DNA of 64,000 bases from Scyliorhinus canicula (Eukaryota): assembly GCF_902713615.1 (NCBI RefSeq), contig NC_052149.1, forward strand, positions 126,111,256 through 126,175,255, given 5' to 3'. The notes under the pieces were generated by a model. That model made no database searches and was not told the DNA's origin. It worked only from the letters and a program-made list of their open reading frames with translations. This document shows positions 1 to 44,762 of the stretch, one piece after another; within the stretch, counting starts at the first letter, position 1, and every line of letters starts with the position of its first letter. Both the position numbers and the translations under genes were made by a program.

Positions 1-300
1 CGAATCCCATCACAGCAGATGGCTAAATTTGAATCCAATCAAAATTGAATTCAATGTTTAATGATGACCCTGAAATGACTGTTGATTGTTGTAAAAGCCC
101 ATCTCGTTCCCTAATGTCCTTTTGGGAAAGAAGTCTGCCGTCCTTACGTGGTCTGGCCTACATGTGATTCCAGGCTAACAACAATTTGGTTGACATCTGG
201 GAAAACACTTCTGAAATGCAGCCACTTAGAGGGCAATTAGGGATGGGCAATAACTGCTGGCCCAGAAAATGACACCCACACCAATGAATACATTTAAAAA
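1..300 (+). mobile_element. tRNA-derived SINE (5'-truncated) with a LINE-derived 3' tail; copy 2 at ~39085-39390
   Basis: B box GGTTCGAATCC is visible in copy 2 (39089-39099). Tail AATTAGGGATGGGCAATAA is shared with LINE 3' ends at ~2690 and ~12766. Confidence 0.7.
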
Positions 301-1773
301 ACAATTCACCCAGCAACGTGGAAAATTGCCCAGGTTTGTCCTGCACACACCAAACAGGACAAATCCAACCCGGCCGATTACTGCTCCATCAGGCTACTCT
401 CGATCATCAGTAAGGGATGATCAACAGGGCTATCAAGTGTCGTTCAGTCTTGGGGTCACTCAGCTCCTGACCTCATTACAGCCTTGGTTCAAACATGGAC
501 AAAAGAGCTGAACTCCAGCGGTGAGGCCAGAGTAACTGCCCTTTGACCTCGAGGCAGCATTTGACCAAGTTTGGTATCAAGGAGCCCGAGCAAAACTGGC
601 GTCAATGGGAATCAGGGGGAAAACTCTCCGCTGGTTGGAGTCATACCCAGCACAAAGGAAGATAACTGTGAATATTGGAGGTCAGTCATCTCTGTCCTCG
701 GACATCCACACAATCCCTACAGTGCAGAAAGAGGCCATTTGACCCTTTGAGTCGGCACCAGCCCTCCAAAACAGTACCGCACCCAGGTCCACTCCCCCGG
801 CCAATCCCCACAGACCAATCTAACCTTTGGATTCTAATTCACAATTCAACCTGGCTAATCCACTTAACCTGAATTTTCTTGGACTGTGGGAGGAAACCGG
901 AGCACCCAAAGAAAACCCATGCAGACAGCGGGAGAACGTGCAAAATCCATAAAGTCACCCAAGGTTGGAATTGAACACATGTCTCCGGCGCTGTGAGGCA
1001 GAAGTGCCAACCACTCTGCCACCATGGACATTACTCACGGGTTCTTCAGGGGAGGCTCCGAGGCTCAACCAGCTTCAGCTGCTTCATGAATGACTTTCTT
1101 TCTGTCATGAGGTCAGACGTGGGGATGTTCATTCATGACTGCACAATGTTCAGCACAATGTTCAGCACCATTCACAACTCCACAGACACTGAAGCAGACC
1201 TTGCCCTATTACAACAAGGCCTGGACAAAACCCCGGTTTGGGCTGGCAACTGGCAAGTAACATTTGTGCCAGACAATGACCATCTCCAACAAGAGAGAAT
1301 CTAACCATTAACCCTTCACATTCAAAGGCAGTACCTTCACTAAGTTCCCGATTATCAGCATCCTGCAGGTTACCAATTACCAGAAACTGAACTGGACTAA
1401 CCATATAAATACTGTGACGACAAGAGCAGGTCAAAGATGAGGAATCCTGTGGCAGGTAACTCACCTCCTGACTCCCTAAAGCTTATCCACCATTTACAAG
1501 GCACAAGCTGGGAGTGTGATGGAATACTCTCCACTTCCCTGGATGAGTGCAACTTCAAAAGCACTCAAGGAGCTCAACACCATCCAGGACAAAGAACCCC
1601 CACATGATTGGTACCCCACCCACAAACATTCTCTCCCTCCACCACTGATGAACAGTGGCAGCCGTCTGTACCATCTACAAGATGCACTGCATGATCTCAC
1701 CAAGGTTCCTTGGGCAGCAGCTTCCAAACCCACAACCACGACCATCTAGAAGGACAAAGGCAGCAGATACATG

Positions 1774-2492
1774 GGTCGGGATTCTCCAGAAACGTGGCTA
1801 AGTGTTGGCGCCGGCATAAACACCGGAGTGCTTCACGCCGGCATCAATGGGTGTCTTGGTCCAGCGATTCTGTATCCCACAGGGAGCCAGCACGGCACTG
1901 GACTACTCTGCGCTGCTCCAGCTGCCATACGCAGCTCTGCAATGCTGGCCGCGGGTCCACACATACGTGTGGCGGCCGCTTCCACGCCAGCACTGCACAA
2001 CATGGCAGAGCAACACAGCAGACCGGCACGGAAGAAGGTAGGCCCGCCGAAGGTGGTCCCCAATCACGGACCTGGCCGTCGTGGAGGCCCGATCACGGAC
2101 CTGGCCGTCGTGGAGGCCCGATCACGGACCTGGCCGTCGTGGAGGCCCGATCACGGACCTGGCCGTCGTGGAGGCCCGTCCAGAAGACTGATTCCCCCCC
2201 GCCCTCCACCAGGACGGCCACTGCAGCCACGACGCCGAGCTCCCGCCGGTTGCAACCATATATGAACCACGTCGGCGGGAACTCGGCTGGTCGACCGCGG
2301 AGAATGGCCGCGGGGGCCTCTTTCAAAGGTCCCTGACTGGTGTTGCGTTGATCGCGTGCATGTAACTGCCGCCGAATCTCCGGTCGCCGGAGAATCGCGT
2401 CGCAGCGTCGGACCCAATCACGGGTCTGAGGCCCCATTCTGCGCCACCGCTCCGAGTGCCATTTCGCCACGGAGGCTCGGAGAATCCTGGTC
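1774..2492. mobile_element. GC-rich non-autonomous TIR element (PIF/Harbinger-type MITE); copy 2 at 40866-41512
   Basis: Imperfect 13-bp TIRs GGTCGGGATTCTC / GAGAATCCTGGTC; flanks ATG/TTG (3-bp TSD, one mismatch); the host LINE resumes on both sides. Confidence 0.7.
2063..2178 (+). repeat. 29-bp tandem repeat x4 (ATCACGGACCTGGCCGTCGTGGAGGCCCG)
   Basis: Four units read directly; only one unit in the paralog (41170-41198). Confidence 0.95.
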
Positions 2493-2789
2493 TTGGGGTC
2501 AGCACTCCCTGGAACTTGGCCACCAAGTCACTAACCATCCTGACTTGGAAATATATTACCATTCCTTCATTGTCACGGATTCGAAATCCTGGAACTCCCT
2601 TCCTAACAGCACTCACGGTGTATCTATACCGCAAGGACACCAGCGGATTCAGAAGGCAGTTCACCACCACCTTCTGAAGGCTATGAAGGATGGGCAATAA
2701 ACGCTGGTCCAACCAAAAACTCCCACATCACAGAAATAAATTTCAAAATTGCAAAATGAATTTGTGGTAGCAATTAAGAGAAGAAAAAG

Positions 2790-3290
2790 TTAACTTGTGT
2801 GTGGAGTTGGGAGACATGGAGATAGTTCTTAATGAATAATTGACATCAGTTTTCACAAATGAGAGAGACAAAGCTGGCAATGGAAGAGTGATAATGTTGT
2901 ACCGTTGTTTAAAAAGGGAGGAAGGGACAGACTGAGTCATTACTGACCAGTCAGTCTAACCTCAGTGGTCGGGAAATTATTGGAAATAATTCTGAGAGAA
3001 ATTAGAATCATCATTGAGAGAGACACAGTTCGATCAAGGACGGTCAACATGGATTTGTGAAGGGAAGGTCCTGTCTGACTAACTTGATTAACTTTTTTGA
3101 AGAGGGAACGAGGAGTGTTGATAAGGGGAGGGAGTTTGCTGTTGACAACATGGGTTTTCCAAGAACTTTGACAGTTCTCCAACAACAGACGTGTCTGAAA
3201 ATTAAAAGCTGATGGAATCAAAGGGAAAATTGAAAATTGGATTTCAAATTGGTTCAGTGTCAGGAGGTAAAGGTTTGCTGTTAAACTGGT
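2790..3290 (+). mobile_element. Degenerate CR1 RT fragment (copy 2 ~41810-42310)
   Basis: ANVVPLFKKG..YRPVSLTSVVGKLLE..HGFVKGRSCLTNL-like remnants with stops. Confidence 0.7.
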
Positions 3291-3364
3291 TAAATCATTT
3301 TGGAATGTTATCTAAACATTTGTAAAGAAGGTTACTACAAATTCAGCACTGAAATGGTTTCTTT

Positions 3365-3581
3365 TAATTTCGAGTACCCAATTCATATTTTTCCCAATTA
3401 AGGGGCTATCTAGCGTGACCAATCCACCTACCCTGCACGTCTTCGGATTGTGGGGGTGAGACCCACGCAGACACGGAGAGAATGTGCAAACTCCACACGG
3501 ACAGTGGTCCGGGGCCGGGATTAAACCCGGGTACTCAGTGCCATAGGTAGTAGTGCTAACCACTGCACCACCATGCCACCT
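3365..3581 (-). mobile_element. HE1/V-SINE-type tRNA-derived SINE (copy 2 ~42385-42600)
   Basis: A/B-box head and V-domain-like core GTGTGGAGTTTGCACATTCTC...CCACAA. Confidence 0.8.
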
Positions 3582-4691
3582 AGCACTGAAATTGCTAATA
3601 GTATAAGTTTTTAAAGACACAATGTCCCTTAAAGAGACTGTTAACCAGTCAGGAAGCTCAAACTATTGATCAGAATTTTTGGGGGAACAGGTTGAACATT
3701 AACAAGCCACACACAGAGCGGGAGAACTTTATCCCAGAACATTGGAGCAGACTTGGAGCAACACATTTCACAAAGGATTCTGATCGGAGGTCAGTACAGA
3801 AGTTTCTAGATTTAATTTCAAACCCTGCCGCCCAGCACTGGGCTGAGGTCAAGGGTGAGGCTACAATTAGCCTCAGTGTCCGGGGGTCAGACAGGGTCAT
3901 TGCTCCTAATAACCCCCTGGCCTTTGGAGGCTGAGAGTGTGCGAACAATGGGCGAGGGTCAGGATCAGGAATCTCCAAAGTTAAAGAAAGATTTGCATCT
4001 CTGTAGCATCTGAACCACCTGATGTTGTCCTCAAATGTTTTGCAGCCAATTGTGCACAGCAAGATCCCAAAACAGCAATGAGTCAATGAGCATTTGGAGG
4101 AATGTTGAATCAGGGATAAATATCGGACTGAACTCGACCCAAAGAGAAAGTAACTGAGAGTCTCCCCAAGGGCCTGGAACACTGAAGCCACTGGATTGTG
4201 AGCCCTGCTGGACCTGTTTGTCATCAGAACTTTGCTAAGAGATAAGCAGGGAGTGGAGAGAGCAGAGTTAAAGCTGGGGGAAGTGGGACCTCGGTGTCTC
4301 ACTGTGCTGCTGCTGCTGCTGTGATCAGTTATATCAGAGAGTGTGACAGGGAGCCAGAGCTCACATCAAACTCTGCCCGTGTCTGTCACACGCAGACTGA
4401 CAGGAGTCTAGTGAGTGATTTCACTCCATGGTCCAGGAATGTGAACACAGTCTGCAAACGTCCAGATCTCCTCCACACGGTGGGTAAAAGCTGCTTACTT
4501 ATATCTTGCTGCTTAAAGGGGGGGAATGGAACTAAATAAATACAGCTGGGCACCCTGTTCTACACAGTGTTCTTCAATGAACCATTTCATTCACTGCAGC
4601 TCCCCACTAACACTTTCAACTATTCAGCATTTGTGTTTGAGAAAGTTTCAGTATTGAAAGGGTTAATAACGGAGGATTGGGGTTTACTTAC

Positions 4692-4726
4692 TCAGTCTGA
4701 GCTTGGTTCCTTTACCGAACGTAAGC
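4692..4726 (-). CDS. IGKJ: Ig kappa J segment, cluster 1 (LTFGKGTKLRL)
   Basis: FGxG motif; splice donor GTAAGT at 4691-4686; 23-RSS on its 5' side; identical to the J at 43711-43745. Confidence 0.95.
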
Positions 4727-4765
4727 CACACTGACAGCTTCCAGTGCAGGGGCTGTACAAAAACC
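4727..4765 (+). other. 23-RSS of J (cluster 1)
   Basis: Heptamer CACACTG 4727-4733, 23-nt spacer, perfect nonamer ACAAAAACC 4757-4765. Confidence 0.95.
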
Positions 4766-5119
4766 TCTGCTCTCTGCTTCACTCACTCACTCTCACCCTC
4801 TCTCTTTCTCTCTCTGTGTCTCTCACTCACTCATGTCTTTCTCTCTCACTCTTTCTCTCTCTGTTTCTCTCAATGTCTCTGTGTTTGTTGGGAGAGTTGA
4901 GAATTCTACTTTTCGACAATAAACCTTTCAGCTGCTCTTCATATGTGGACATGGAGAGTAAGATGGAAACTTGAGGCCTTCAGTGAGCTGTGGATACCAC
5001 AGGGACTGGAGTGTGTAGTGGACGGTGAGAATCATTTGTACAGTTTCCTATCTTGTGTTTATTCTCTATTACATAAAACTGGGATGTATCAGTACAGGAG
5101 GTGGGAATGTGTGTATTGG

Positions 5120-5147
5120 GGTTTTTGTAAGGCTCTGTATCACTGTG
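5120..5147 (-). other. 12-RSS of V (cluster 1)
   Basis: CACAGTG-ATACAGAGCCTT-ACAAAAACC on the minus strand; perfect consensus. Confidence 0.98.
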
Positions 5148-5445
5148 AGAGGCCAGCTCTTATACTGCTGACAGTAATAATCAGCGACATCCTCATTCTG
5201 CACATTGCTGATTTTCAGGGTGTATTGTATTCCAGATCCACTGCCGGTGAATCGGTCGGATATTCCTGTGAATCGGGTTGAGGCAGAGTAGATCAGCAGA
5301 GCCGGTTTCTGACCTTCTCGCTGTTGATACCAAGCAACATAACCGCTAGCAGATTGACTGGCCGTACAGGTGAGGGTCGCAGTCTGGCCCAGGCTCAATG
5401 ACAGCACCGGGGGAGACTGGGTCATGATGATGTCTCCACTGATAC
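5148..5445 (-). CDS. IGKV: Ig kappa V exon, cluster 1 (mature DIIMTQSP...[10 protein letters not shown])
   Basis: Conserved Cys, WYQQ, LLIY, YYC; short kappa-like CDR1 and CDR2; acceptor CCTCAG|G at 5446/5445; open frame with the leader; unrearranged. Confidence 0.96.
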
Positions 5446-5631
5446 CTGAGGGGTAATAGAGAAACAGAATGAAGTAAGAACTGTCACAGAAAGAGCCTGT
5501 ACAATGAGATATTGTTGGAGACACTGACTGTTCCTCTGCTTTCAGCATTTTCCCTTCAATCACAAGTCAGGAGAATTGGGTTGAAATGGAGAGCAGGAAA
5601 ATATTCAAGGTGGAAGGAGAGAGATTTGTAC

Positions 5632-5680
5632 CTGCGATGCAGAATGCCAGAGGCCAGATCAGCTGGATGGCTGAAATCAT
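5632..5680 (-). CDS. IGKV: Leader exon, cluster 1 (MISAIQLIWPLAFCIA-G)
   Basis: ATG at 5680, hydrophobic signal peptide, phase-1 GT donor at 5631, in frame with the V exon. Confidence 0.9.
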
Positions 5681-5740
5681 GGTGTCTGCTCCTGTCCCTG
5701 TGCCTGGTTACTGATAAACTCTCCCTTCACTGGGCTCTGC

Positions 5741-5819
5741 TTTATAAAGCTGCAGCCTGTGAGTGTCTGACTGCCCGTTCCTCAGTATGTAAATGGCATG
5801 AGGCAGAGACACCACGTCA
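5741..5819 (-). promoter_or_regulatory. V promoter, cluster 1: TATA, variant octamer, CRE-like site
   Basis: TTTATAAA 5741-5748; ATTTACAT (one mismatch to ATTTGCAT) 5787-5794; TGACGTGG 5812-5819. Position upstream of the ATG is typical of V promoters. Confidence 0.7.
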
Positions 5820-6148
5820 GCACCTTCACTTCCTCTTCTTCTCTCTCACTCCCTCCCTCAGTATCTGTCCCTCAGTCTCTGCTCTCTCTCTCTCTCTTCC
5901 TGTCTCTTTCCTCCTCTGTGTCAGTTTCCCACTTTCTGCCTCTGACTCTCCCTCTCTCTGACTGTCTCTATGTATTCTCTTTCCTTTTTCTCTCTTTTTG
6001 TCCATCTCTCTCACTCTTTCTTTCTCTCTCTCTTTCTCAGTATCCCTCTATCTCTCTGTACCATTCTCCATCGTCCTGCAATTCTCCAACTGATCTCTGT
6101 AACTGGTGTCATTATTGGAGATTGGAACACTTTAAGTACTTGTGCAGC

Positions 6149-7253
6149 AGTTAAATGCTTCCCTCTCTCTCTCTCTGTCAGTCTGCCCCTCGCTCTCTCT
6201 TTCCCACACTCTCCCAGGTGGATCACAGTTAAATGCTTCCCTCTCTCTCTCTGTCACAGTCCGCTCCTCGCTCTCTCTTTCCCACACTCTCCAGGTGGAT
6301 CACAGTTAAATGCTTCCCTCTCTCTCTCTATCACAGTCTGCTCCTCGCTCTCTCTTTCCCACACTCTCCCAGGTGGATCACAGTTAAATGCTTCCCTCTC
6401 TCTCTCTCTGTCACAGTCCGCTCCTCGCTCTCATCTTTCCCACACTCTCCCAGGTGGATCACAGTTAAATGCTTCCCTCGTCACAGTCTGCCCCTCGCTC
6501 TCTCTTTCCCACACTTCCCAGGTGGATCACAGTTAAAAGCTTCCCCCCCCTCCCCCTCTCTCTATCACAGTCTGCTCCTCGCTCTCTCTTTCCCACACTC
6601 TCCCAGGTGGATCACAGTTAAATGCTTCCCTCTCTCTCTCTGTCACAGTCTGCCCCTCACTCTCTTTCCCATACTCTCCCAGGTGGATCACAGTTAAATG
6701 CTCCCCCCCTCTCTCTGTCACAGTCTGCTCCTCGCTCTCTCTTTCCCACACTCTCCCAGGTGGATCACAGTTAAATGCTTCCCCCTCTCTCTCTGTCACA
6801 GTCTGTTCCTCGCTCTCTCTCTCTTCCCACACTCTCCCAGGTGGATCACAGTTAAATGCTTCCCTCTCTCTCTCGGTCACAGTCTGTTCCTCGCTCTCTC
6901 TATCCCACACTCTCCCAGGTGGATCACAGTTAAATGCTTCCCTCTCTCTCTCTGTCACAGTCTGTTCCCTCGCTCTCTCTTCCCACACTCTCCCAGGTGG
7001 ATCACAGTTAAATGCTTCCTTCTCTCTCTCACTCTGTCAGTCTGTTCCTCGCTCTCTCTATCCCACGCTCTCCCAGGTGGATCACAGTTAAATGCTTCCC
7101 TCTCTCTCTCACTCTGTCAGTCTGTTCCTCGCTCTCTCTATCCCACACTCTCCCAGGTGGATCACAGTTAAATGCTTCCCTCTCTCTCTCTCGGTCACAG
7201 TCTGCTCCTCGCTCTCTCTTTCCCACACTCTCCCAGGTGGATCACAGTTAAAT
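6149..7253 (+). repeat. ~79-bp minisatellite, 14 units, each with CAGGTG
   Basis: Unit CCCACACTCTCCCAGGTGGATCACAGTTAAATGCTTCC(CT)nGTCACAGTCTGCTCCTCGCTCTCTCTTT, counted by eye. Confidence 0.95.
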
Positions 7254-7694
7254 GTAGGATAAATCTTCCTCTGCTCTGCGTCAACAATGGAGGTTAACTC
7301 TTGACCCCAGAAGCATATCTTCTGAAGTAAGGCCCCATTTCCCACATTGACCATGCTGCAGCCTTGCTCAGTCAGACTGACAGATCATTGTCAGATTAAG
7401 GGTAGTTCTGTGCTGTTGGTCTATTCTCACTGGGTACTGGTTCAGATACAATATTTAATGAAGGCCCAGCAGAGAGAGGAGATCCTCACCCCATTAGTGT
7501 GAGCTGGAGGGACAGAGACTGAGCCACTGATGCATCCTGTCCATTCAGAGCACATTCAGACCCCTTCCCCCCTCCTTCCCCTTCCATGGTCAGTCTCTGG
7601 GTCCTGGTGTTTAAATGGGATGAGGGTTGGATAACCACACATTTACAACATAAAGGAACCATCCTCCTTATCGACCATGGTGTCCATGTCTTAA

Positions 7695-9165
7695 CTGACC
7701 CTCCAATCCGGACCAGTAAACATGGGCCTCCTTCCCACTGACCCTCCAATAGGGACTAGTAAACATGGCCTTCCCACTGACCCTCCAATAGGGACCAGTA
7801 AACATAGGCCTCCTTCCAACTGACCCTCCAATAGGGACCAGTTAACATGGGCCTCCTTCCCACTGGACCCTCCAATAGGGACCAGTAAACATGGGCCTCC
7901 TTCCCACTGGGCTCTCCAATAGGGACAAGTAAACATGGGCCTCCTTCCCACTGGACCCTCCAATAGGGACCAGTAAACATGGGCCTCCTTCCCACTGGAC
8001 CTCCAATAGGGACCAGTAAACATGGGCCTCCTTCCCACTGGGCCCTCCAATAGGGACCAGTAACATGGGCCTTCTTCCCACTGGATCCTTCAATAGGGAC
8101 CAGTAAACATGGGCCTCCTTCCCACTGGACCCTCCAATAGGGACCAGTAAACATAGGCCTCCTTCCAACTGACCCTCCAATAGGGACCAGTTAACATGGG
8201 CCTCCTTCCCACTGGACCCTCCAATAGGGACCAGTAAACATGGGCCTCCTTCCCACTGGACCCTCCAATAGGGACCAGTAAACATGGACCTCCTTCCCAC
8301 TGGATCCTCCAATAGGGACCAGTAAACATGGGCCTTCTTCCCACTGGGCCCTCCAATAGGGACATGTAAACATAGGCCTCCTTCCAACTGACCCTCCAAT
8401 AGGGACCAGTTAACATGGGCCTCCTTCCCACTGGACCCTCCAATAGGGACCAGTAAACATGGGCCTCCTTCCCACTGGACCTCCAATAGGGACCAGTAAA
8501 CATGGGCCTCCCTTCCCCTGGGCCCTCCAATAGGGACCAGTAAACAGGGCCTTCTTCCCACTGGATCCTTCAATAGGGACCTCGTAAACCCATGGGCCTC
8601 CTTCCCACTGGATCCTCCAATAGGGACCAGTAAAACATAGGCCTCCTTCCAACATGCAACCCCCAATAGGGACAAGTTAACATGGGCCTCCCCTTCCCAC
8701 TGGACCCTCCAATACGGGACAACAGTAAACCAATGTGGTTGCCCTCCTTCCCACTGGCTCGTCCAATCGGGACAAGGTAAACATAGGCCCTCCTCCCCCT
8801 GGACCCTCCAAATAGGGACCAGGTAAACATGGGCCATCCTTCCTCACTGGACCTCCAATAGGGACCAGTAAACATGGGCCTCCTTTCCACTGGGCACTCC
8901 AATCGGGACCAGTAAACATGGGCCTCCTTCCCACTGATCCTTCAATAGGGACCATAGAAACATGGGACTTTCCTTCCCACTGGATCCTCCAAAGAGGTGG
9001 ACCAGTAACCATGGGCCTCTTCCCACTGGGCCCTCCAATAGGGACCAGTAAACATGGGCCTCCTTCCCACTGGACCCTCCAATAGGGACCATTAAACATG
9101 GGCCTTCTTCCCACTGGACCCTCCAATAGGGACCAGTAAACATGGGCCTCCTTCCCACTGGACCT
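7695..9165 (+). repeat. 44-bp minisatellite, ~34 units
   Basis: Unit CTCCAATAGGGACCAGTAAACATGGGCCTCCTTCCCACTGGACC; noisy between ~8500 and 9050. Confidence 0.95.
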
Positions 9166-9224
9166 CCTCTGAGCTTCAAGTCCACATCCTCTCCATCACG
9201 GAGGCCCCTTATTTCCATATCCAC

Positions 9225-9527
9225 TGATGTGACCATCAATTCATGAGACACGTGGTTGGAAGTGAACAGTGGTTTTAATAGTCTTACAACAGAGGCTGCC
9301 TGCGACGTGATGAACTGGCAGGCAGGCTCACGACTGCAAAGCTTTATACTTCGGTTAGTGGAAGGAGCCATGGGCGGAACCATGGGCGGAGCCAAAGGTG
9401 GAGTCCAGTACAAACTCCTCATCTCCCCCTATGGGCAGAGCCGCGCAACTGCTCGGTATACGAGCTTACATGAATACAACACGTCATATAACAACAGTGT
9501 GAATTAAGAGGAGTGTGATTCACCACA
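9225..9527 (-). mobile_element. Solo LTR, gypsy-type (copy 2 47457-47759)
   Basis: TG...CA termini (TGATG / CACA) and a TCCAC direct repeat on both sides. Confidence 0.75.
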
Positions 9528-9754
9528 TCCACAACATTGTCCGTCTCTACACTACATCAGCCCCTTGAGCACAGAACCCCTTATTCCGGCTTGTCCCGCC
9601 TCCTAACTCTATTATTCTGATATCCTCTCCTGGCTTCCTTTATTCACACTCCCCATCCTGTCCCAAATGCAGTGGGTCTGTACCCTGTCACGCACAAACT
9701 GTTACCCCAGCAGTACCCCTGATCTCACTGACCTATTACCCCTAACCTCATGAA

Positions 9755-11300
9755 AACATTGAAACATAGAAAATAGGTGGAGTGGGCCATTCGGCCCTTC
9801 AAGCCTGCACCACCATTCAATATGATCATTGCTGATTATGCAAATTCAGAATTCCACTCCCGCTTTCTCTCCATACCCCTTGATCCCTTTAGCTGCAAGG
9901 GCCACGTCTAGTTATCTCTTGAATATATCCAACGAACTGAACCCAACAGCTTTCTGTGGTAGAGGATTCCACAAGTTCACAACTCTCGGAGAGAAGAAGC
10001 TCTTCCTCATATCAGACCTGAATGGCTGCCCCTTATTCTCAGGCTGTGACCCCTTGTTCTGGACGTCCCGAACATCGGGAACATTCTTCCCACATCCAGC
10101 CTGTCCTGGTCTCATTAGGATTTATATGTTTCTATGAATTCCCCTCTCAGTCTTCTAAACTCCAGTACAAGCCCAGTCTTTCTTACTCAGTCCTGCCATC
10201 CCGGGAATTAGCCTTCGCTGTACACCCTCAATAGCAAGAATGTCCTTCCTCAAACCAGGAGACCAAAACTGCACGCATTACTCAAAGCATGTCCTCACAT
10301 AGGGCAGCACGGTGCCTAGTGTGTTAGCACAACCGCCTCACGGCGCTGAGGTCCCAGGTTCGTCCCGGTTCTGGGTCACTGTCCGTGTGGAGTTTTGCAC
10401 ATTCTTCCCCGTGTCTGCGTGGGTTTCGCCCCCACAACCCAAAAATGTGCAGAGTAGTGGATTGGCCACGCTAAATTGCCCCTTATTGAAAAAAAAAAAT
10501 AATTGGGTAGTCTAAATTTACAAAAAAAGACATGTCCTCACCAAGGTCCTGTATAACTGCAGCAAGGCTTCCCTGCTCCTATACTCAAATAATGGGGCAG
10601 CACGGTAGCATGGTGGTTAGCATAATGCTTCACAGCTCCAGGGTTCCAGGTTCGATTCCCGGCTGGGTCACTGTCTGTGTGGAGTCTGCATGTCCTCCCC
10701 GTGTGTGCGTGGGTTTCCTCCGGGTGCTCCGGTTTCCTCCCACAGTCCAAAGATGTGCGGGTTAGGTGGATTGGCCATGCTAAATTGCCCGTAGTGTCCT
10801 AAAAAGTAAGGTTGGGGGGGGGGGGGGGGGGGGCGTTGTTGGGTTACGGGTATAGGGTGGATACATGGGTTTGAGTAGGGTGATCATTGCTCGGCACAAC
10901 ATCGAGGGCCAAAGGACCTGTTCTGTGCTGTACTGTTCTATTCTATAATTTTGCCATAAAGGCCAGCATACCATTAGCTTTCCTCCACCGCCTGCTGTAC
11001 CTGCATGCCGACCTTCAGCTACCGTTCCACCATGACATCCAGGTGCTCGTTGCACTTTTCCTAAAGTGCCATCATTTCAGAGAGTAATCCTGCTTTCTGT
11101 TTTTTGCCACCGAAGTGCATAATCTCATATTACCCACATTATATTGCATTTGTCAAGTATTTGCCCTCTCAAGGCCAGCCCTGTCTCGGTACCCTGCAGC
11201 CTCTTTGCATTTTCCTCACGGCACACAGTCACCCAGCTTAGTGTTGTCTGCAAATTTAGAGATATTGCATGCAAATCTTATTTCACTATCATTAATGTAT
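9755..11300 (-). mobile_element. CR1 3' fragment with two nested HE1-type SINEs (+; 10302-10530 and 10594-10947); copy 2 ~47990-49520
   Basis: CR1 C-terminal motif (MRKSFFSPRVVNLWNPLP). SINE A/B boxes; CATGTCCTCAC TSD around the first SINE. Confidence 0.8.
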
Positions 11301-11304
11301 ATTG

Positions 11305-11448
11305 ACCTGTTACCCCTAACCTCACCCTGACCTGTTACCCCAGACCTCATGACCTGTTACCCCTAACCTCATTGACCTGTTACCCCTAACCGCACTGACC
11401 TGTTACCCCTAACCCTCACTGACCTGTTACCCCTAACCTCACTGACCT
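11305..11448 (+). repeat. 23-bp minisatellite CCTCACTGACCTGTTACCCCTAA (~6 units; ~17 units at 49526-49921)
   Basis: Read directly; further degenerate units at ~9700-9750 and ~12180-12225. Confidence 0.9.
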
Positions 11449-11449
11449 T

Positions 11450-12155
11450 GGGCGGAATTATCCGACCCCCCGCAGGGTCAGGGACATTGCCTGGGCCGGT
11501 GTAAATCCCACCCCCGCCGTGGCCGGAATTTCTCTGCCCCCCGGGAATCGACAGGGGCGGGAATCACGACCCTGCCGGTCGGCGGGCCCCCTGCAGCGAT
11601 CCTTCGGCCCGGGATGGGCTGAAGTCCCGCCGCTGTCAGGCCTCTCCCGCCAACGTGGTTTAAACCACCTCTGTGCCGGCGGGATTGGTGGCACGGGCAG
11701 GCCCCCGGGGTCCGGGGGGGGGGGGGGGGGGGGGGCGCGGGGGCGATCGGACATCAGGGGTGCCCCCACGGTGGCCTGGCCGGTGATCGGGGCCCACCGA
11801 TCGGTGGGCGGGCCGTGGCCGTGGGGCACTCTTTTTCTTTCCGCCGCAGCCACGGCCTCCACCATGGAGGAGGTGGAAGAGACACCCTCCACCGCGCATG
11901 CACCAGTGGTGACGTCAGCGGCTGCTGACGCTCCGGCGCATGCGCGGACTCATGCCGACCGGCGAAGGCCTATCGGCCAGCCCCGACGCCGGCGGCGTGG
12001 CGCCAAAGGCAGTTGGTGGAGCGGAGCCACTCCGGCGCGGGCCTAGCCCCTAAAGGTGCGGAGAATTCTGAACCTTTGGGGAGGCCCGATGCCGGAGTGG
12101 TTGGCAAACCGGGACCCACACCACCCCGCCCGCCGGGTAGGGGAGAATTTCGCCA
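11450..12155. mobile_element. GC-rich Harbinger-type TIR element (copy 2 49923-50632)
   Basis: Copy 2 TIRs GGGCGGAATTATC / GAGAATTTCACCC, flanks CTG/ATG; inserted within the minisatellite. Confidence 0.65.
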
Positions 12156-12994
12156 ATGTTTCCCGGGTGCCTGTGCCCTAGTACCCCAGACCTCACTGAA
12201 CTGTTACCCCTTACCTCACTGACCCACAATCTCTGTCCTCCATTACCTTCAGGGAAGCGTCATTCCTCCCTACCCTTGTGTTCGGCTGCAGACTCACATT
12301 GTCTCCCTCACCCCCTCCATCTTCTGACTCTGGTCTCCTGCCCATCGCTGTTTGCTTCATCCCACCATTGGCAGCAGAGCTTTCAGATGCCTTGGCTCTG
12401 CTCTCTGACTCTGACCTTTTAAATCTCTTCCCCTCTCCTGGCTTCTTTTTTCTCCATCAAACTTAATCTGTTCACCTCAGCCTTTTATCAATCTTCCTAA
12501 GGTCCCCCCAACACCCTTCCCCGCTACTCTTACTGCCTCTCTGTGAAAATATCCTGGGATGTTTTTACACATTAAGGCGCTAGATATATTCAGGATGCGA
12601 GTAAATTCTGGGTGGGGACAAAAGTGGACAAAATGGTGATGGATCTTGCAGTCAAATATCCTGCTGAGAGGGTCCAGAATGCCACACACAAAATAGGGAA
12701 GTAGGGTGGAGTTTTTTTTATGTTTCCATTTCTGGGACTTGGGGGTCACGATCCAGAACAGCTTTCATTGCCCATCCCTAATTCTCCTTGGAAAGGTGCT
12801 TGAACCGCTGCAGGCCCTTTGGTGTAGGAACATCCACTGTGCAGTTTAGGGAGGGAGTTCCAGGACTTTGACCCAGTGATAGTGAAGGAACGGCGATATA
12901 TTTCCAAGTCAGAATGGTGAGTAACTGGGAGGGGAACTTACAGATGATGGTGCTCCACTTATCTGCTGCCCTTGTCTCTCTAGATGTCTCTCTT

Positions 12995-13295
12995 TGATGT
13001 ACCATCAATCGGACTCGAGTCGTGAAGAAGTTCCAAATATCAGGCTTTAATTAACTAGTTGTGTGCCCGGCAGTCGACTTACAGAGAAAGGCCGACTGCT
13101 GCTGTTACGGGTTCTTATACCCCGCCTCGTAGGAGGGGCTAGACCGCCTCTCGGCCAATCGGCGAGCAGTCACATGACTAGCCTCAGCCAATTGGCAGAG
13201 AGGTACATGACCTGCCTGAGCCAATGGCAGCGAGACCTCTGCACCAATGCAGCACTGCTCTGAGGTACCGTAAACCTCCTAGTCATACCACCACA
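12995..13295 (-). mobile_element. Solo LTR (copy 2 51468-51770)
   Basis: Minus strand TGTGGTGGTAT...TACATCA, TATAAG, ATTAAA; GATG repeated in the flanks (left copy offset by 8 nt). Confidence 0.7.
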
Positions 13296-13559
13296 GATGG
13301 TAGAGGTCATGAGTTTGGAAGGTGTTGCCTGAGTAAACTTGGTGAGTTTCTGCAGGGCATCTTGTAGATGGTACACACAGCAGCTACTGTGCGTCGGTGG
13401 TGGAGGGAGTGATTGTTTTATGGAAGGGCTGTTAATCAAGCGGCTACTTTGTCCTGGATGGTGTCGAGCTTCTTGAGTGTTGTTAGAGCTGCACGCACCC
13501 AGGCAAGTAGAGAGTATCACACTCCTGACTTGTGCCTTTTGGTATCTCTCACCTCACCT

Positions 13560-14857
13560 CTGGCATTCAGCTCTTTGTCCATGTTTGAACCAAGGCTGTT
13601 GTAAATGTCCTTCCTGTTTATTCCTTTACTTCCCCTTTCTTTATTTTTGCTATTACATCTTTAATCCATAGATAATTTATGGACCTGTCTCTTTAAGGAA
13701 AGTGGCCTGTGCCTTTAATTTGAACAGAAGAATCCAGAAAAGACTGCTGATTGCAGATTGGCCAGTGTCAGTGATGACTCGGTTTGACCGATTTGGCTGG
13801 TGGCCAATAAATGGCCCCAAAAGGCCGTGTTCTGCCCGGTAACAGGTTGTGCTTGGATCTGTTCCCACTGAAATGGCTCAGAGACCTAATGTGGTTTCAG
13901 TTTCGCGATGGAAGCTGATAGATAAAACTTATTTTTTTTGCACTTTGTTCCAGAAATAACCACCAAATTCTCACCAAATGCCCACTTTGGGAAGCAGCTC
14001 TTGCTGCAGAAAAGGCTGATGTGAAGCCAGGCGCCTGGGCTGGAAAAGCTGTGAGTAAGGTCTACTGCTGAACGGCAAAGAAGATAATTGCGAGCTGTAG
14101 TTCAGCAACGTTAATCCACACTCATACTGTGAAGAAAGTACATAGAGTACATAGAACAGTACAGCACAGAACAGGCCCTTCGGCCCTCAATGTTGTGCCG
14201 AGCCATGATCACCCTACTCAAACCCACGTATCCACCCTATACCCGTAACCAATAACCCCCCACCTTAACCTTACTTTTATTAGGACACTACGGGCAATTT
14301 AGCATGGCTAATCCACCAACCCGCACATCTTTGGACTGTGGGAGGAAACCGGAGCACCGGAGGGAAACCCACGCACACAGGGGGAGGACGTGCAGACTCC
14401 ACACAGACAGTGACCCAGCCGGGAATCGAACCTGGGACCCTGGAGCTGTGAAGCATTTATGCTAACCACCATGCTACCCTGCTGCCCCTGACATTAAAGA
14501 ACTCATCATCTGAAGCAAGGACTCTTATCTTTTGATCTGAAGGCTTATTTTTGTAACTCCTTTCCACCCCTCTGTGCTTGTTTGTCTAGTGTGTGTGGGT
14601 GGAGGGTGGGACGGTTAAAGGAGGAGTCAGGTGCTAACATGTCATTAAGCACTGTGTTTACTGCATATTCATATTTGTCCTTGTTATAAATAAAAAGTAA
14701 TTGTGAATAAACTTACAACCTGGTGACTGTAATTATCAGATAGCCAAAGGCCAATGTTTTGGGGATCTTTATGAGAATTATTGGTTAATTCACATTGTGG
14801 TTGTGACTCTGGGCATGTGGGGCTGGAATTGACCGTGCACTTGCCCAGTGTACATGA
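13560..14857 (+). mobile_element. Possible degenerate solo LTR inserted in the LINE
   Basis: Interrupts LINE collinearity; AATAAA near 14690; no clear TG..CA or TSD found. Confidence 0.3.
14144..14490 (-). mobile_element. HE1-type SINE present only in copy 1
   Basis: Full head to (TTCTATG)-type tail; ACAT on both sides; empty site AAAGTACATTAAAGA at ~52610 in copy 2. Confidence 0.9.
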
Positions 14858-16812
14858 GGTCAGGAGCTGAGTGACCCTGGCACAACCCAAACTGGGCGTC
14901 CGTGAGCAGGTTATTGTGAAGTAAGTACCACTTGATAGCACTGTTGATGACCCCTTCCATCAATTGACTGATGATTGAGAGTAGACTGATGGGGAGGTAA
15001 TTGTCCTATTTCTTGTGGGCTGGATATGCCTGGGCAAGTTTCCACATTGCTGTACTGGAACAGCTTGGCTAGGGGTGCGGCAAGTTCTTGAGCACAAGTC
15101 GTCAGTACTATTGCTGGAATATTTACAGGGCACACAGCCTGTGCAGTATCCAGGGCCTTCAGCCATTTCTTGATATCACGTGGAGTGAATCGAATTGGGT
15201 GAAGATTGATATCTGTGATGCTGCAGACCTCTGGAGGAGACCGAGACGGATCATCCACTTGGCACTTCTGGCTGAACATTATTGCGAATGTTTGATCCTT
15301 GTTTTTTGCACAGATGTGCTGAGTTCCCACATCATTAAGGGTGGAGATATTTTGGAACCTCCTCCTCCAGCGGGATGTTTAATTATCCACCACCATTAAC
15401 AACTGGATGTGGCAGGACGGTAGAGCTTAAATATGATCCATTGGTTGTGGGATCGCTTAGCTCTGTCTGTCACTTGCTGCGTGTGCTGTTTGGTAGCTTC
15501 CCCAGGTTGACACCCCATTTTTCGGTCTGCCTGGTGCTGCTCCTTGTGTCCTCCTGCACTCTTCATTGAACCAGGGTTGACCCCCTGGTTGGTGATAATG
15601 GTAGCAGTGAGGAATATGTTGGGCCTTGAGGTAAAAGACTGTGGTTGAATACAATTCTGTTGCTGCTGATGGCCCACAGCATCTCACGGGGTGCCCAATC
15701 TTGAGTGCTTGGATCCCTTTGAAGTCTATCCCATTTTGCATGGCAGTAGTGCCACACATGATGCAGGGTTCCTCAATGTGAAGATGGGACTTTATCCCTG
15801 TGTGTGGTGGTCACTCCTACCAATACTGTCATGGACAGATGTATCCGTAGCAGGCAGGTTGGTGAGGATGAGGTCAAGTATGTTTGTCCCTCTTGTTGGT
15901 TCCCTCACCACCTGCTGCAGTCCCAGTCTAGCAGCTATGTCCTTTATGTCTCTGGCCAGCTCGGTCTGTGGCAGTACTACTGAGCCACTCTTGGCGATGG
16001 ACATTGAACGTCCCCACCCAGAATACAATTGCCCCATTTCCTCAGTGCTACTTCCAATTAGAGTTCAACATGGTGGAGTTCTGATTCATAAACTGCAGTC
16101 GATGGTAACCAGCAGGAGGTTTCCTTGTCCATGTTTGACCTGGTACCATGAAGCTACATGGAGTCTGGATTCAATGTTGAGGATTCCCAGGGCAATTCCC
16201 GAAAGTTTACCACTGCGCCCACACCCCTGCTGGGTCTGTCCTGCCGGTGATACAGGACATACCCAGGCATGGTGATGGTGGTGTCTGGGACATTATCTAT
16301 AAGGTATGATTCTGTGGGTGTGACTATGTCAGGCTGTTGCTGACTAGTCGGTGGGACAGCTCTCCCAATTCTAACACAAGCCCCCAGATATCAGGAAGGA
16401 AGGACTTTGCAGGGTCGACAGGCTGGGTTTGCTTGGGTTGTTTCCGGGGTCTATGTCGATGTCGGGTGGTCTGTTCGGTTTCATTCCTTTTAGAATTTTC
16501 AGCGATTTGATACAACTGAGTGGCTATTTCAGAGTCAACCACATTGCTGTGGGTCTGGAGTCACATGTAGGCCAGACCAGGTAAGGACGGCAGATTCCCT
16601 TCCCTCAAGGACATTAGTGAACCAGACGTGTATGTGCGACAATCGACAATGTTTCATTACTGAGACAAGCTTTTAATTCCAGATTTATTCATTGAATTAA
16701 TTGAATTTAAATTGCACCAGCTGCCATGGTGGGATTTGAACCTTGACCAGAGCATTAGCCTGGCCTCTGGATTACTAGTCCAGTGACATTACCAACACCA
16801 CGGCCTCCCCCA

Positions 16813-38349: not shown

Positions 38350-38678
38350 CTACACACATTCTGATCTCCTGATGCTCTTGCTGAGGGCAGAGGAGAGGCT
38401 CACGTGGGTGAGGGCACAGGAGAAGCGGGCGTTGGACTCCCAGGCAGAGCCAGAGAGGGTCAGCAGGCTGCTGACGCTGTAGGTGTTGTCCGAAGCTCGC
38501 AGGTAGTTGCTGGTCTGAACCCCGTCCGAAATGGCTGCACCATCCTTCTTCCACTCCACCACCAGCTCATCGGGATAGAAGTGATTGGCAAGGCACACCA
38601 GGGTGGCAGTGCCCTTGGTCTTGACCTCCTCCAGGGAGGGGGGCAGCAGGGTCAGCGTTGGTTGTGAATTTTCACGGC
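38350..38678 (-). CDS. IGKC: Ig kappa constant exon (RENSQPTLTLLPPS...VCLANHFYP...W...FSCALTH...RSECV*)
   Basis: C1-set Cys-Trp-Cys, penultimate Cys, TAG at 38350-38352; acceptor TTTCAG|GC in phase with the J donor; resembles shark kappa (NS4/type III) C. Confidence 0.96.
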
Positions 38679-41600
38679 CTGAAAGAGAGGGAAAGGAATT
38701 TAAATCTCTACCATTATAAAGGATTTAATCTTCCTGAAGATTACCTGGGATCAAATCAATGTCAGTGTATATGTCTGTGCAGATGATCTAGATTGCTGGC
38801 AATCCATTCTCGGGAACTTCTTTAACCTGTACCGAAAAATCCCAACAAGAAAGAGGCAGTTTTGGACAGTTTTCGCGATTAAATCTGGGCAGGCGAAGGG
38901 GTATCAGTGGAAGAGTATTTGGGTAATAGTGATCATAATTCAGTTCAATTTAGAGTAGTTATGGAAAAGGATAAAGATAAACCAAGAGTAAAAGTTTTAA
39001 ATTGGGGAAAGGCCACTTTTACAAAACTGGGATTTGCCAAAATGACTTCTACGTTATTATTACTTATTTTTTCTGTTCGGTGAACCCAGGTTCGAATCCC
39101 ATCACAGCAGATGGCCAAATTTGAATCCAATAAAAATTGAATTCAATGTTTAATGATGACCCTGAAATGACTGTTGATTGTTGTAAAAGCCCATCTCGTT
39201 CACTAATGTCCTTTTGGGAAAGAAGTCTGCCGTCCTTACGTGGTCTGGCCTACATGTGATTCCAGGCTAACAACAATTTGGTTGACATCTGGGAAAACAC
39301 TTCTGAAATGCAGCCACTTAGAGGGCAATTAGGGATGGGCAATAACTGCTGGCCCAGAAAATGACACCCACACCAATGAATACATTTAAAAAACAATTCA
39401 CCCAGCAACGTGGAAAATTGCCCAGGTTTGTCCTGCACACACCAAACAGGACAAATCCAACCCGGCCGATTACTGCTCCATCAGGCTACTCTCGATCATC
39501 AGTAAGGGATGATCAACAGTGCTATCAAGTGTCGTTCAGTCTTGGGGTCACTCAGCTCCTGACCTCATTACAGCCTTGGTTCAAACATGGACAAAAGAGC
39601 TGAACTCCAGCGGTGAGGCCAGAGTAACTGCCCTTTGACCTCGAGGCAGCATTTGACCAAGTTTGGTATCAAGGAGCCCGAGCAAAACTGGAGTCAATGG
39701 GAATCAGGGGGAAAACTCTCCGCTGGTTGGAGTCATACCCAGCACAAAGGAAGATAACTGTGAATATTGGAGGTCAGTCATCTCTGTCCTCAGACATCCA
39801 CACAATCCCTACAGTGCAGAAAGAGGCCATTTGACCCTTTGAGTCGGCACCAGCCCTCCAAAACAGTACCGCACCCAGGTCCACTCCCCCGGCCAATCCC
39901 CACAGACCAATCTAACCTTTGGATTCTAAGTCACAATTTAACCTGGCTAATCCACTTAACCTGAATTTTCTTGGACTGTGGGAGGAAACCGGAGCACCCA
40001 AAGAAAACCCATGCAGACAGCGGGAGAACGTGCAAAATCCATAAAGTCACCCAAGGTTGGAATCGAACACATGTCTCCGGCGCTGTGAGGCAGAAGTGCC
40101 AACCACTCTGCCACCATGGACATTACTCACGGGTTCTTCAGGGGAGGCTCCGAGGCTCAACCAGCTTCAGCTGCTTCATGAATGACTTTCTTTCTGTCAT
40201 GAGGTCAGACGTGGGGATGTTCATTCATGACTGCACAATGTTCAGCACAATGTTCAGCACCATTCACAACTCCACAGACACTGAAGCAGACCTTGCCCTA
40301 TTACAACAAGGCCTGGACAAAACCCCGGTTTGGGCTGGCAACTGGCAAGTAACATTTGTGCCAGACAATGACCATCTCCAACAAGAGAGAATCTAACCAT
40401 TAACCCTTCACATTCAAAGGCAGTACCTTCACCAAGTTCCCGATTATCAGCATCCTGCAGGTTACCAATTACCAGAAACTGAACTGGACTAACCATATAA
40501 ATACTGTGACGACAAGAGCAGGTCAAAGATGAGGAATCCTGTGGCAGGTAACTCACCTCCTGACTCCCTAAAGCTTATCCACCATTTACAAGACACAAGC
40601 TGGGAGTGTGATGGAATACTCTCCACTTCCCTGGATGAGTGCAACTTCAAAAGCACTCAAAGAGCTCAACACCATCCAGGACAAAGAACCCCCACATGAT
40701 TGGTACCCCACCCACAAACATTCTCTCCCTCCACCACTGATGAACAGTGGCAGCCGTCTGTACCATCTACAAGATGCACTGCATGATCTCACCAAGGTTC
40801 CTTGGGCAGCAGCTTCCAAACCCACAACCACGACCATCTAGAAGGACAAAGGCAGCAGATACATGGGTCGGGATTCTCCAGGAACGTGGCTAAGTGTTGA
40901 CGCCGGCATAAACACCGGAGTGCTTCACGCCGGCATCAATGGGTGTCTTGGTCCAGCGATTCTGTATCCCACAGGGAGCCAGCACGGCACTGGACTACTC
41001 TGCACTGCTCCAGCTGCCGTACGCAGCTCTGCAATGCTGGCCGCGGGTCCCTACATACATGTGGCGGCCGCTTCCACGCCAACACTGCACAACATGGCAG
41101 AGCAACACAGCAGACCGGCACGGAAGAAGGTAGGTCCCCACAAGGTAGGCCCGCCGATGGTGGTCCCCGATCACGGACCTGGCCGTCGTGGAGGCCCATC
41201 CAGAAGACTGATTCCCCCCCGCCCTCCACCAGGACGGCCACTGCAGCCACGACGCCGAGCTCCCACCGGTTGCAACCATATATGAACCACGTCGGCGGGA
41301 ACTCGGCTGGTCGACCGCGGAGAATCACCGCGGGGGCCTCTTTCAAAGGTCCCTGACTGGTGTCGCATTGACCGCGCGCATGTAACTGCCGCCGAATCTC
41401 CGGTCGCCGGAGAATCACGTCCCAGCGTCGGACCCAATCACGGGTCTGAGGCCCCATTCTGCGCCACCGCTCCGAGCGCCATTTCGCCGCGGAGGCTCGG
41501 AGAATCCTGGTCTTGGGGCCAGCACTCCCTGGAACTTGGCCACCAAGTCACTAACCATCCTGACTTGGAAATATATTACCATTCCTTCATTGTCACCGAT

Positions 41601-44702: not shown

Positions 44703-44762
44703 GGTGTCTGCTCCTGTCCCTGTGCCTGGTTACTGATAAACTCTCCCTTCACTGGGCTCTGC

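What the first reader, a model, noticed from the sequence alone, without database searches (positions are those of the whole stretch)
5148..5161. Germline kappa V paralogs differ by runs of contiguous substitutions confined to CDR3, next to the RSS
Seen: V1 TAT AAG AGC TGG CCT CT|CACAGTG versus V2 (44170-44183) TAT GGC AGC TAC CCC TA|CACAGTG. That is 8 differences in 14 nt, as runs of 3+2+3 around a conserved AGCT. The other 284 nt of the exon have 3 differences; leader, RSS and J are identical; background is about a dozen substitutions in the first 1.8 kb. Known: shark Ig hypermutation characteristically makes 2-4 nt tandem substitutions, AGCT is an AID hotspot, and sharks carry germline-joined Ig genes attributed to RAG activity in germ cells. 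Inference: germline AID-type mutation, open-and-shut RAG joints, or micro gene conversion may diversify unrearranged V ends heritably.
Basis: partly seen in the sequence, partly recalled or inferred. Interest (0 to 1): 0.75.

Follow-up and report, generated by a model that had tools for sequence, protein, structure and literature searches.

The report
Shark kappa V twins differing only in CDR3
Two almost identical copies of a catshark antibody light-chain V gene differ in a tight 14-base patch at the antigen-binding tip, but both versions of that patch also occur in a distant shark order, so this looks like the known shuffling and retention of old CDR3 variants, not a new germline mutation process.

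Summary
Two unrearranged kappa V genes (minus strand) lie in a 17-kb segmental duplication that is about 1.4-3.5 % diverged. They differ at 8 of the last 14 coding bases before the heptamer, in runs of 3+2+3. The rest of the exon has 3 differences, and RSS, leader and J have none. Chance is excluded (about 6e-8).

The patch is not fresh mutational noise. In the 15-base CDR3 core, V2 is 2 bases from bamboo-shark gene L006 and V1 is 3 bases from L002/L003. V1 and V2 differ from each other at 6. Their frameworks are 1 % apart from each other and about 15 % from bamboo shark. Contigs from two catshark individuals show many further paralogs that mix the same pieces. These include a possible TGG-TGC-TAC intermediate and similar patches in CDR1 and CDR2.

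Best reading: old CDR3 types were exchanged between near-identical clusters by gene conversion and kept by diversifying selection. This is known from Bentley and Rabbitts (1983) and from skate clusters (1995). No exact donor was found. Nothing supports germline AID or RAG open-and-shut joints specifically. Neither version was confirmed in raw reads. Another report of this scan made a parallel point on TCR-alpha J segments.

The parts
5148..5161 (-). CDR3-end patch of V1 (AAGAGCTGGCCTCT; K-S-W-P-L type)
   Evidence: 8 of 14 bases differ from V2
44170..44183 (-). CDR3-end patch of V2 (GGCAGCTACCCCTA; G-S-Y-P-Y type)
5148..5445 (-). V1 exon 2 (end of leader plus V domain), open frame, Pfam V-set
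   Evidence: splice joint 5442/5629 (cut +3) in run X13
5632..5680 (-). V1 leader exon (MISAIQLIWPLAFCIAG)
5120..5147 (-). V1 RSS: heptamer CACAGTG (5141-5147), 12-nt spacer, nonamer ACAAAAACC (5120-5128)
   Evidence: read; aligned with bamboo-shark RSSs
4692..4726 (-). J1 segment (..FGKGTKLRL), followed by splice donor GTAAGT
4727..4765 (-). J1 RSS: nonamer GGTTTTTGT, 23-nt spacer, heptamer CAGTGTG
44170..44467 (-). V2 exon 2, open frame, Pfam V-set
44142..44169 (-). V2 RSS (12-nt spacer), identical to that of V1
43711..43745 (-). J2 segment, identical to J1
38356..38688 (-). C-kappa exon of cluster 2 (C1-set; 93 % identical to S. torazame kappa C). The C exon of cluster 1 lies left of the window.
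1..16812 (.). Copy 1 of the segmental duplication that carries cluster 1
39093..54941 (.). Copy 2 of the segmental duplication that carries cluster 2

Best explanation
V1 and V2 are the V genes of two neighbouring V-J-C kappa clusters created by a recent 17-kb-plus duplication in a large, highly homogenised catshark kappa family. Their CDR3 ends are two old sequence types of that family: ..AGC TGG CCT.. (S-W-P) and ..AGC TAC CCC.. (S-Y-P). After the duplication, one copy most likely received the other type from a third cluster by ordinary germline gene conversion. Family members are almost identical outside the CDRs, so a tract anywhere between 14 and about 218 nt changes only CDR3 visibly. 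Diversifying selection on the antigen-contact loop then keeps the two copies different. Shown here: the clustering, the duplication, the trans-species match of both types, and CDR-focused divergence and mosaicism in shark kappa families. Inferred: the conversion event itself, its direction and the role of selection.
For: Clustering: 8 of 14 against a 1.4 % background. Incongruent similarity: in the 15-nt CDR3 core, V2 is 2 nt from bamboo-shark L006 and V1 is 3 nt from L002/L003, while V1 and V2 differ at 6. In the frameworks, V1 and V2 differ by 1.0 % and are about 15 % from bamboo shark. The longest shared strings are AGAGCTGGCCT (V1 with L002/L003) and GCAGCTACCC (V2 with L006). At 6 of the 8 differing columns, both states occur among bamboo-shark paralogs. 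S-W-P-L also sits on a GSGSG-type framework in Hemiscyllium P0059, S-Y-P-Y in C. punctatum P0064, and F-P-Y in S. torazame P0049. One silent change (CCT/CCC) rides inside the patch. Contigs of two individuals give further CDR3 variants that reuse the same 3' halves with different codon 92, a TGC form between TGG and TAC, and block changes in CDR2 and CDR1. The CDR2 block has 5 changes in 12 nt, two of them silent, and decodes to NAATRFT, as in bamboo-shark P0107/P0064. The CDR1 block includes an AGC-triplet insertion. In bamboo shark, CDR1 and CDR3 diverge 3-8 times faster than frameworks or flanks in the closest pairs (L001-L003) and about 2-5 times in the more distant ones. The 5' part of those genes is homogenised within the species (5 % against 10 % between species), while FR3 and the V-J interval keep 18-20 % subfamily divergence. 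That shows conversion-type exchange among shark kappa clusters. Precedent: skate IgL clusters differ preferentially in CDRs, with replacement substitutions exceeding silent ones (PMC2192082). [quoted passage not shown]
Against: No exact 14-mer donor was found, neither in the window nor among the contigs listed (an incomplete list). The trans-species identity could be convergence: the loop is constrained (Q-Q-x-x-S-x-P), Ser is always AGC, and W-P and Y-P forms also exist in mammalian kappa chains. With only two full copies from this genome, no formal recombination test was possible. My reconstruction of contig variants from the tables is tentative.
Confidence: 0.57

Rival explanations
1. Stepwise point mutations, fixed by very strong diversifying selection on three or four CDR3 codons after the duplication, without any templated transfer. 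The similarity to bamboo-shark types would then be convergence on a few allowed loop sequences.
For: All three non-CDR3 exon differences change the amino acid. Possible single-step intermediates exist among the contigs (TGG/TGC/TAC; GGC/AGC). The same loop motifs recur in mammals.
Against: About 0.2 substitutions are expected in 14 nt at this divergence, and 8 are seen. One of them is silent. Paths between TGG and TAC pass through Cys or a stop codon.
Confidence: 0.14
2. A germline multi-nucleotide mutation process of the shark hypermutation type (AID-initiated, error-prone tandem synthesis) hit the AGCT-centred end of an unrearranged V gene in germ cells.
For: Runs of 3, 2 and 3 adjacent substitutions flank an AGCT. 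Shark somatic hypermutation makes tandem changes of 2-4 bases (PMC5931798).
Against: Both products match pre-existing types in other sharks, which random tandem changes would not be expected to hit. The AGC itself is invariant in all eight genes compared. There is no evidence here for AID in germ cells or for targeting of unrearranged V genes. Conversion explains the same runs.
Confidence: 0.1
3. An assembly or polishing chimera: in a family of many near-identical clusters, reads of another paralog were used to correct the CDR3 of one copy, so one of the two versions does not exist at that locus.
For: Neither exact CDR3, nor V1's private letters at 4924, 4995, 5349, 5469, 5571 and 5580, appear in the contigs of X1, X7, X17 or X13. 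Runs X1, X7 and their sister runs hold none of the sampled words of 5118-5191.
Against: Logan contigs drop rare branches, so absence means little. Run X25, from another study, holds 2 of 3 sampled words. Both genes are intact and look typical. The contigs themselves prove that such CDR3 variety exists in the family.
Confidence: 0.1
4. An open-and-shut RAG joint in germ cells reprocessed the V coding end.
For: Germline-joined genes show RAG-like activity in shark germ cells (PMC2193156). The patch abuts the heptamer. V-end length varies among paralogs (CCCTA, CCCCTA, CCCCCCAT).
Against: V1 and V2 ends are equally long. The changes reach 14 nt inward with an unchanged AGCT between them. There is no consistent palindromic P addition. 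Equivalent patches occur in CDR1 and CDR2, far from any RSS.
Confidence: 0.03

Closest known systems
Divergence of recently duplicated human V-kappa genes by germline gene conversion (Bentley and Rabbitts, Cell 1983; reference seen; content recalled from memory)
   Same: Near-identical, recently duplicated kappa V genes whose differences are clustered rather than spread, explained by transfer from other family members.
   Different: Here the genes sit in shark-type V-J-C clusters, not a translocon. The patch is confined to the last 14 coding bases, and no donor has been identified yet.
CDR-focused divergence among germline IgL clusters of cartilaginous fish (Anderson et al. 1995, Raja erinacea, PMC2192082), and positive selection on V-gene CDRs (Tanaka and Nei 1989, cited there)
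   Same: There are many clusters, differences lie preferentially in the CDRs, and replacement changes exceed silent ones.
   Different: The skate genes are germline-joined type I genes, whereas these are split kappa genes with intact RSSs. The contrast here is extreme (35 % in CDR3 against 0-2 % elsewhere) because the duplication is so young.
Nurse shark NS4 (kappa) family with split and germline-joined members (Lee et al. 2000, PMC2193156)
   Same: It is the same isotype with the same cluster layout, the V coding flanks vary between family members, and RAG activity in germ cells is inferred.
   Different: Both genes here are unjoined, and nothing in them requires RAG processing.
Tandem (2-4 base) substitutions of shark somatic hypermutation (Lee et al. 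2002, cited in PMC5931798)
   Same: Runs of 2-3 adjacent substitutions next to an AGCT hotspot.
   Different: Those are somatic changes in rearranged genes of lymphocytes and create new sequence. Here the genes are germline and unrearranged, and both products match existing family types.

Membership tests
Cartilaginous-fish Ig kappa (type III / NS4-like) V-J-C cluster | V-set domain most similar to kappa V regions | tested here: met
   Pfam V-set E=1e-17. The best database relatives are named 'immunoglobulin kappa light chain-like' in sharks. The top PDB matches are kappa chains.
Cartilaginous-fish Ig kappa (type III / NS4-like) V-J-C cluster | V with a 12-spacer RSS and J with a 23-spacer RSS, unrearranged | tested here: met
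   CACAGTG-12-ACAAAAACC after V, and GGTTTTTGT-23-CAGTGTG before J.
Cartilaginous-fish Ig kappa (type III / NS4-like) V-J-C cluster | One V, one J and one C within a few kb, repeated as clusters | tested here: met
   V2 to J2 is about 420 nt, and the C exon lies about 5 kb further on at 38356-38688. The second cluster is 39 kb away.
Germline gene conversion between V paralogs | Clustered differences in otherwise near-identical duplicates | tested here: met
   8 of 14 against 1.4 %.
Germline gene conversion between V paralogs | A third family member carries the transferred sequence (the donor) | tested here: inconclusive
   No exact donor was found. There are partial matches in catshark contigs and near-matches in bamboo-shark genes. 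The other clusters of this genome could not be read.
Germline gene conversion between V paralogs | Silent changes co-transferred with replacement changes | tested here: met
   CCT/CCC inside the CDR3 patch. There are two silent changes inside the CDR2 block of a paralog contig.
AID-type shark hypermutation acting in the germline | Contiguous 2-4 base substitutions near WRCH/AGCT | tested here: met
   Runs of 3, 2 and 3 around AGCT.
AID-type shark hypermutation acting in the germline | Untemplated, novel sequence | tested here: not met
   Both forms match existing types in other sharks. Convergence is not excluded.
AID-type shark hypermutation acting in the germline | AID active on unrearranged V genes in germ cells | not testable with these tools
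   No germ-cell expression or pedigree data were available.
RAG open-and-shut joint | Changes limited to the coding end, with loss of bases or P/N addition | tested here: not met
   The ends are equally long, the changes reach 14 nt inward, and there is no consistent palindrome.

The most novel reading that the evidence does not exclude
Shark germ cells actively renew the RSS-proximal CDR3 of unrearranged V genes. A RAG nick at the heptamer border or an AID lesion at the AGCT would be repaired from a paralogous template or by error-prone tandem synthesis. Cluster-type Ig loci would then gain heritable CDR3 diversity faster than ordinary mutation allows.
Probability: 0.08. Interest if true: 0.8.

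Novelty: new member of a known kind. Interest (0 to 1): 0.3.

Why it matters
Sharks carry their light-chain genes as many small V-J-C clusters with little combinatorial choice, so germline differences between clusters are a large part of the primary repertoire. This pair is an unusually clean example: a young duplicate with 35 % divergence in CDR3 and 0-2 % elsewhere. It shows how such families stay uniform in framework and regulatory DNA while keeping a stock of old binding-loop variants. The CDR3 and CDR2 types shared by catshark and bamboo shark suggest that this stock is either very old or tightly constrained. That is useful for annotating shark Ig loci and for models of V-gene evolution, but it does not change the current picture.

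Tried and rejected
1. DNA of S. torazame kappa loci (P0049, P0007) could not be fetched because the assembly files are too large. The sister-species test was therefore not done.
2. No proteins of the window's own species appeared in two protein searches, so same-genome paralogs came only from Logan contigs.
3. Logan contigs cannot phase, drop rare branches, and the tables were cut (114 pieces and 4 rows not shown). My CDR3 reconstructions from matching depths are tentative. Depth ratios (68-87 against about 5) hint at many copies, but the tool warns that depth is not copy number.
4. The word search on 5118-5191 sampled only 3 words, which is weak.
5. Exact 11- to 14-mer searches for a donor inside the window found nothing.
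6. Other 'clusters' of substitutions in the duplicate are one-base alignment shifts and were discarded.
7. P-nucleotide reading of the V ends: TA in V2 and TCGA in L006 are palindromic, but most ends are not, so this was rejected as chance.
8. Findings search by words 'kappa CDR3' gave no kappa note.
9. Recent reviews say nothing on germline CDR3 diversification in sharks.

Full report
WHAT IS THERE. The finding lies in an immunoglobulin kappa light-chain cluster on the minus strand. V1 has a leader exon (5632-5680) and an intron. Its V exon (5148-5445) ends in TGT CAG CAG TAT AAG AGC TGG CCT CT. A consensus 12-spacer RSS follows (CACAGTG, 12 nt, ACAAAAACC; 5120-5147). About 390 nt further on there is a 23-spacer RSS and a J segment (4692-4726) with a GTAAGT donor. 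A second cluster has the same layout at 43711-44702, and its C exon is at 38356-38688. The V domains hit Pfam V-set and the C exon hits C1-set. The nearest database proteins are shark 'immunoglobulin kappa light chain-like' entries. The C exon is 93 % identical to that of Scyliorhinus torazame. Earlier notes of this scan call the genome small-spotted catshark. I did not verify the species name myself.

The two clusters belong to a segmental duplication, 1-16812 versus 39093-54941, and its left end runs off the window. In the first 6.1 kb there are 94 substitutions. Eight of them fall in 5148-5161, in runs of 3, 2 and 3 around a shared AGCT. Outside that patch the exon has three differences (5214, 5229, 5349), and all three change the amino acid. 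RSSs, leader and J are identical. At the background rate of 0.0142, eight or more hits in 14 bases has probability 4.6e-12. That is about 6e-8 after allowing for all aligned windows, and still 8e-5 at the highest block rate of 3.5 %. Every other apparent cluster in the 14 kb of aligned duplicate is a one-base alignment shift or has at most four changes.

THE FAMILY IN THIS SPECIES. Logan contigs from a 2019 sample (X1, possibly the assembly's source), a 2024 individual (X7), a related organism (X17) and an RNA-like run (X13) were laid on 4650-5750. Seventy-five contigs of X1 and fifty of X7 fit at 82 % or better. Eleven different contigs cross position 5349 in X1 alone, so there are many near-identical paralogs. 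Earlier notes place kappa clusters 560 kb before and 780 kb beyond this window (unverified). Variation among the contigs is patchy.
- CDR3 (5148-5165) has many substitutions and one-base length changes.
- CDR2 has a block of five changes in 12 nt (5276-5287), two of them silent, which decodes to NAATRFT.
- CDR1 has changes at 5340-5349 plus an inserted AGC triplet.
- The flanks show only scattered single changes.

By matching depths across the tables I reconstructed these further CDR3 ends:
- TAA AGC AGC TGG CCT CT. This has V1's 3' half, a different codon 92 and an in-frame stop.
- TAT AGC AGC TAC CCC CTA (from X7). This is V2-like and one base longer.
- TAT CAC AGC TAC CCC CCA T.
- TAT TAC AGC AGC CCC TA.
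- GTA AGC AGC TGC CCC TA.

These reconstructions are tentative because some rows were not shown. If they are right, the 3' halves TGG CCT CT and TAC CCC (C)TA are each shared by several genes. Codon 92 varies independently, and TGC is a one-step intermediate between TGG and TAC. Neither exact V1 nor exact V2 CDR3 was among the contigs shown. V1's private letters (4924, 4995, 5349, 5469, 5571, 5580) were also absent. A word search on 5118-5191 found two of three sampled words only in run X25, from another study. Contigs drop rare branches, so this does not refute the assembly, but it does not confirm it either.

COMPARISON WITH ANOTHER SHARK ORDER. Six unrearranged kappa V genes of the bamboo shark Chiloscyllium punctatum were fetched with their flanks (L001-L006) and aligned with V1 and V2. 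Their CDR3 cores read:
- L002: AGT GAG AGC TGG CCT
- L003: ACT GAG AGC TGG CCT
- L001: AGT AGG AGC TGG TCT
- L006: TAT AGC AGC TAC CCT
- L004: GAT TAC AGC TCC CCT
- L005: GGT TAC AGC ATC CCT

In these 15 bases V2 is 2 differences from L006 and V1 is 3 from L002 and L003, while V1 and V2 differ at 6. In the frameworks the picture reverses: V1 and V2 are 1.0 % apart and both are 14-17 % from every bamboo-shark gene. The longest exact strings shared are AGAGCTGGCCT (V1 with L002/L003) and GCAGCTACCC (V2 with L006). V1 and V2 share nothing longer than CAGTAT. At six of the eight columns where V1 and V2 differ, both states are present among the bamboo-shark genes. At protein level, S-W-P-L occurs in Hemiscyllium P0059 on a GSGSG-type framework, S-Y-P-Y in C. 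punctatum P0064, and F-P-Y in S. torazame P0049. The NAATRFT form of CDR2 seen in the catshark contigs is also the CDR2 of bamboo-shark P0107 and P0064. Q-Q-Y-x-x-W-P and Q-Q-Y-x-x-Y-P loops also occur in mammalian kappa chains in the PDB. The two catshark CDR3s are therefore two long-lived, or repeatedly reached, family types. They are not random products of a recent mutational burst.

EXCHANGE AMONG SHARK KAPPA CLUSTERS. In bamboo shark, CDR1 and CDR3 are 12-25 % diverged in the closest pairs (L001-L003), against about 2-7 % for frameworks and flanks. In the more distant pairs they reach up to 46 %, against about 4-20 %. The genes fall into two subfamilies that are 18-20 % apart in FR3 and in the V-J interval, about as far apart as catshark is from bamboo shark. 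Yet promoter, leader and intron are only 5 % apart both within and between subfamilies, against 10 % between species. That mosaic indicates homogenisation of parts of the cluster within a species, which is conversion-type exchange.

MOST LIKELY MECHANISM. A recent duplication produced two identical clusters. Later, one V gene received the alternative CDR3 type from a third cluster by germline gene conversion. Alternatively, and less simply, two older clusters were homogenised everywhere except CDR3. The nearest flanking differences are at 4995 and 5214, so the tract could be anything from 14 to about 218 nt. Family members are nearly identical outside the CDRs, so an ordinary tract would leave exactly this 'CDR3-only' footprint. 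The silent CCT/CCC change inside the patch fits a transferred block. Selection for different antigen-contact loops would then preserve the difference. The 'CCC TA' type is the commoner one in the catshark contigs and in S. torazame, and V1 carries more private substitutions. V1 is therefore the likelier recipient, or the member of a minority lineage; this is inference. The clustering, the duplication, the trans-species matches and the mosaicism in bamboo shark are shown. The conversion event, its direction and the role of selection are inferred. I put this reading at about 0.57.

RIVALS. Point mutation plus very strong selection (0.14) is helped by the possible intermediates and by convergence in mammals. 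It is hurt by the forty-fold excess of changes and by the silent change. A germline tandem-mutation process of the shark hypermutation type (0.10) fits the run lengths (2-4 bases in shark SHM, PMC5931798). It does not explain why both products match existing types or why AGC is invariant in all eight genes, and there is no evidence here for AID in germ cells. A polishing chimera (0.10) cannot be excluded without long reads. A RAG open-and-shut joint (0.03) fits poorly: the ends are equally long, the changes reach 14 nt inward, there is no consistent P palindrome, and similar patches occur in CDR1 and CDR2.

WHAT IS KNOWN. Germline gene conversion was proposed in 1983 for recently duplicated human V-kappa genes (Bentley and Rabbitts; reference seen, content from memory). 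For cartilaginous fish, Anderson et al. 1995 described at least 89 skate light-chain clusters whose differences lie preferentially in the CDRs, with replacement changes exceeding silent ones (PMC2192082). Lee et al. 2000 described the nurse-shark kappa (NS4) family, with varying V coding flanks and germline-joined members attributed to RAG activity in germ cells (PMC2193156). Another report of this scan found the same kind of CDR3-restricted divergence in a TCR-alpha J array and read it as selection. This finding is thus a very clean new example of a known kind. What may be new in detail is the near-identity of CDR3 and CDR2 types between two shark orders on frameworks that are 15 % apart.

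VERDICT. Novelty: a new member of a known kind. Interest is about 0.3. The most novel reading still open is an active germ-cell process that renews RSS-proximal CDR3, at about 0.08.

Noticed in passing
window 5023-5235 (plus strand): RNA-like run X13 has a contig joint that skips 211 nt, with GT..AG on the plus strand (donor G|GTGAG at 5025, acceptor ttccag| at 5235). This is antisense to the V gene and removes RSS, CDR3 and the end of FR3. It may be a spliced antisense germline transcript across the V-J interval.
   Followed up: partly
L001-L006 (bamboo shark), promoter, leader and intron against FR3 and the V-J interval: The 5' part of the clusters is 5 % apart both within and between V subfamilies but 10 % apart between species. 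FR3 and the V-J interval are 18-20 % apart between subfamilies. This indicates region-specific homogenisation (concerted evolution) of the 5' part.
   Followed up: yes
window 4727-4733 and 43746-43752: The J-RSS heptamer reads CAGTGTG in both catshark clusters, where the bamboo-shark genes have the consensus CACTGTG. The coding-proximal CAC (on the other strand) is kept.
   Followed up: no
window 4778-4871 and 43797-43893; L001-L003: A (CT/GA)n microsatellite sits at the same place in the V-J interval in catshark and bamboo shark. It is expanded, with added (GT)n, in one bamboo-shark subfamily. The reads tool skipped it as a repeat.
   Followed up: no
window 5148-5165, contig of run X1 at depth 4.7: A V1-like CDR3 variant reconstructs as CAG CAG TAA AGC AGC TGG CCT CT, with an in-frame stop. 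It is either a pseudogene paralog or an allele of V1.
   Followed up: partly
window 5442-5629: The sense leader-intron splice joint is present in run X13, so this V family is transcribed and spliced in that sample.
   Followed up: partly
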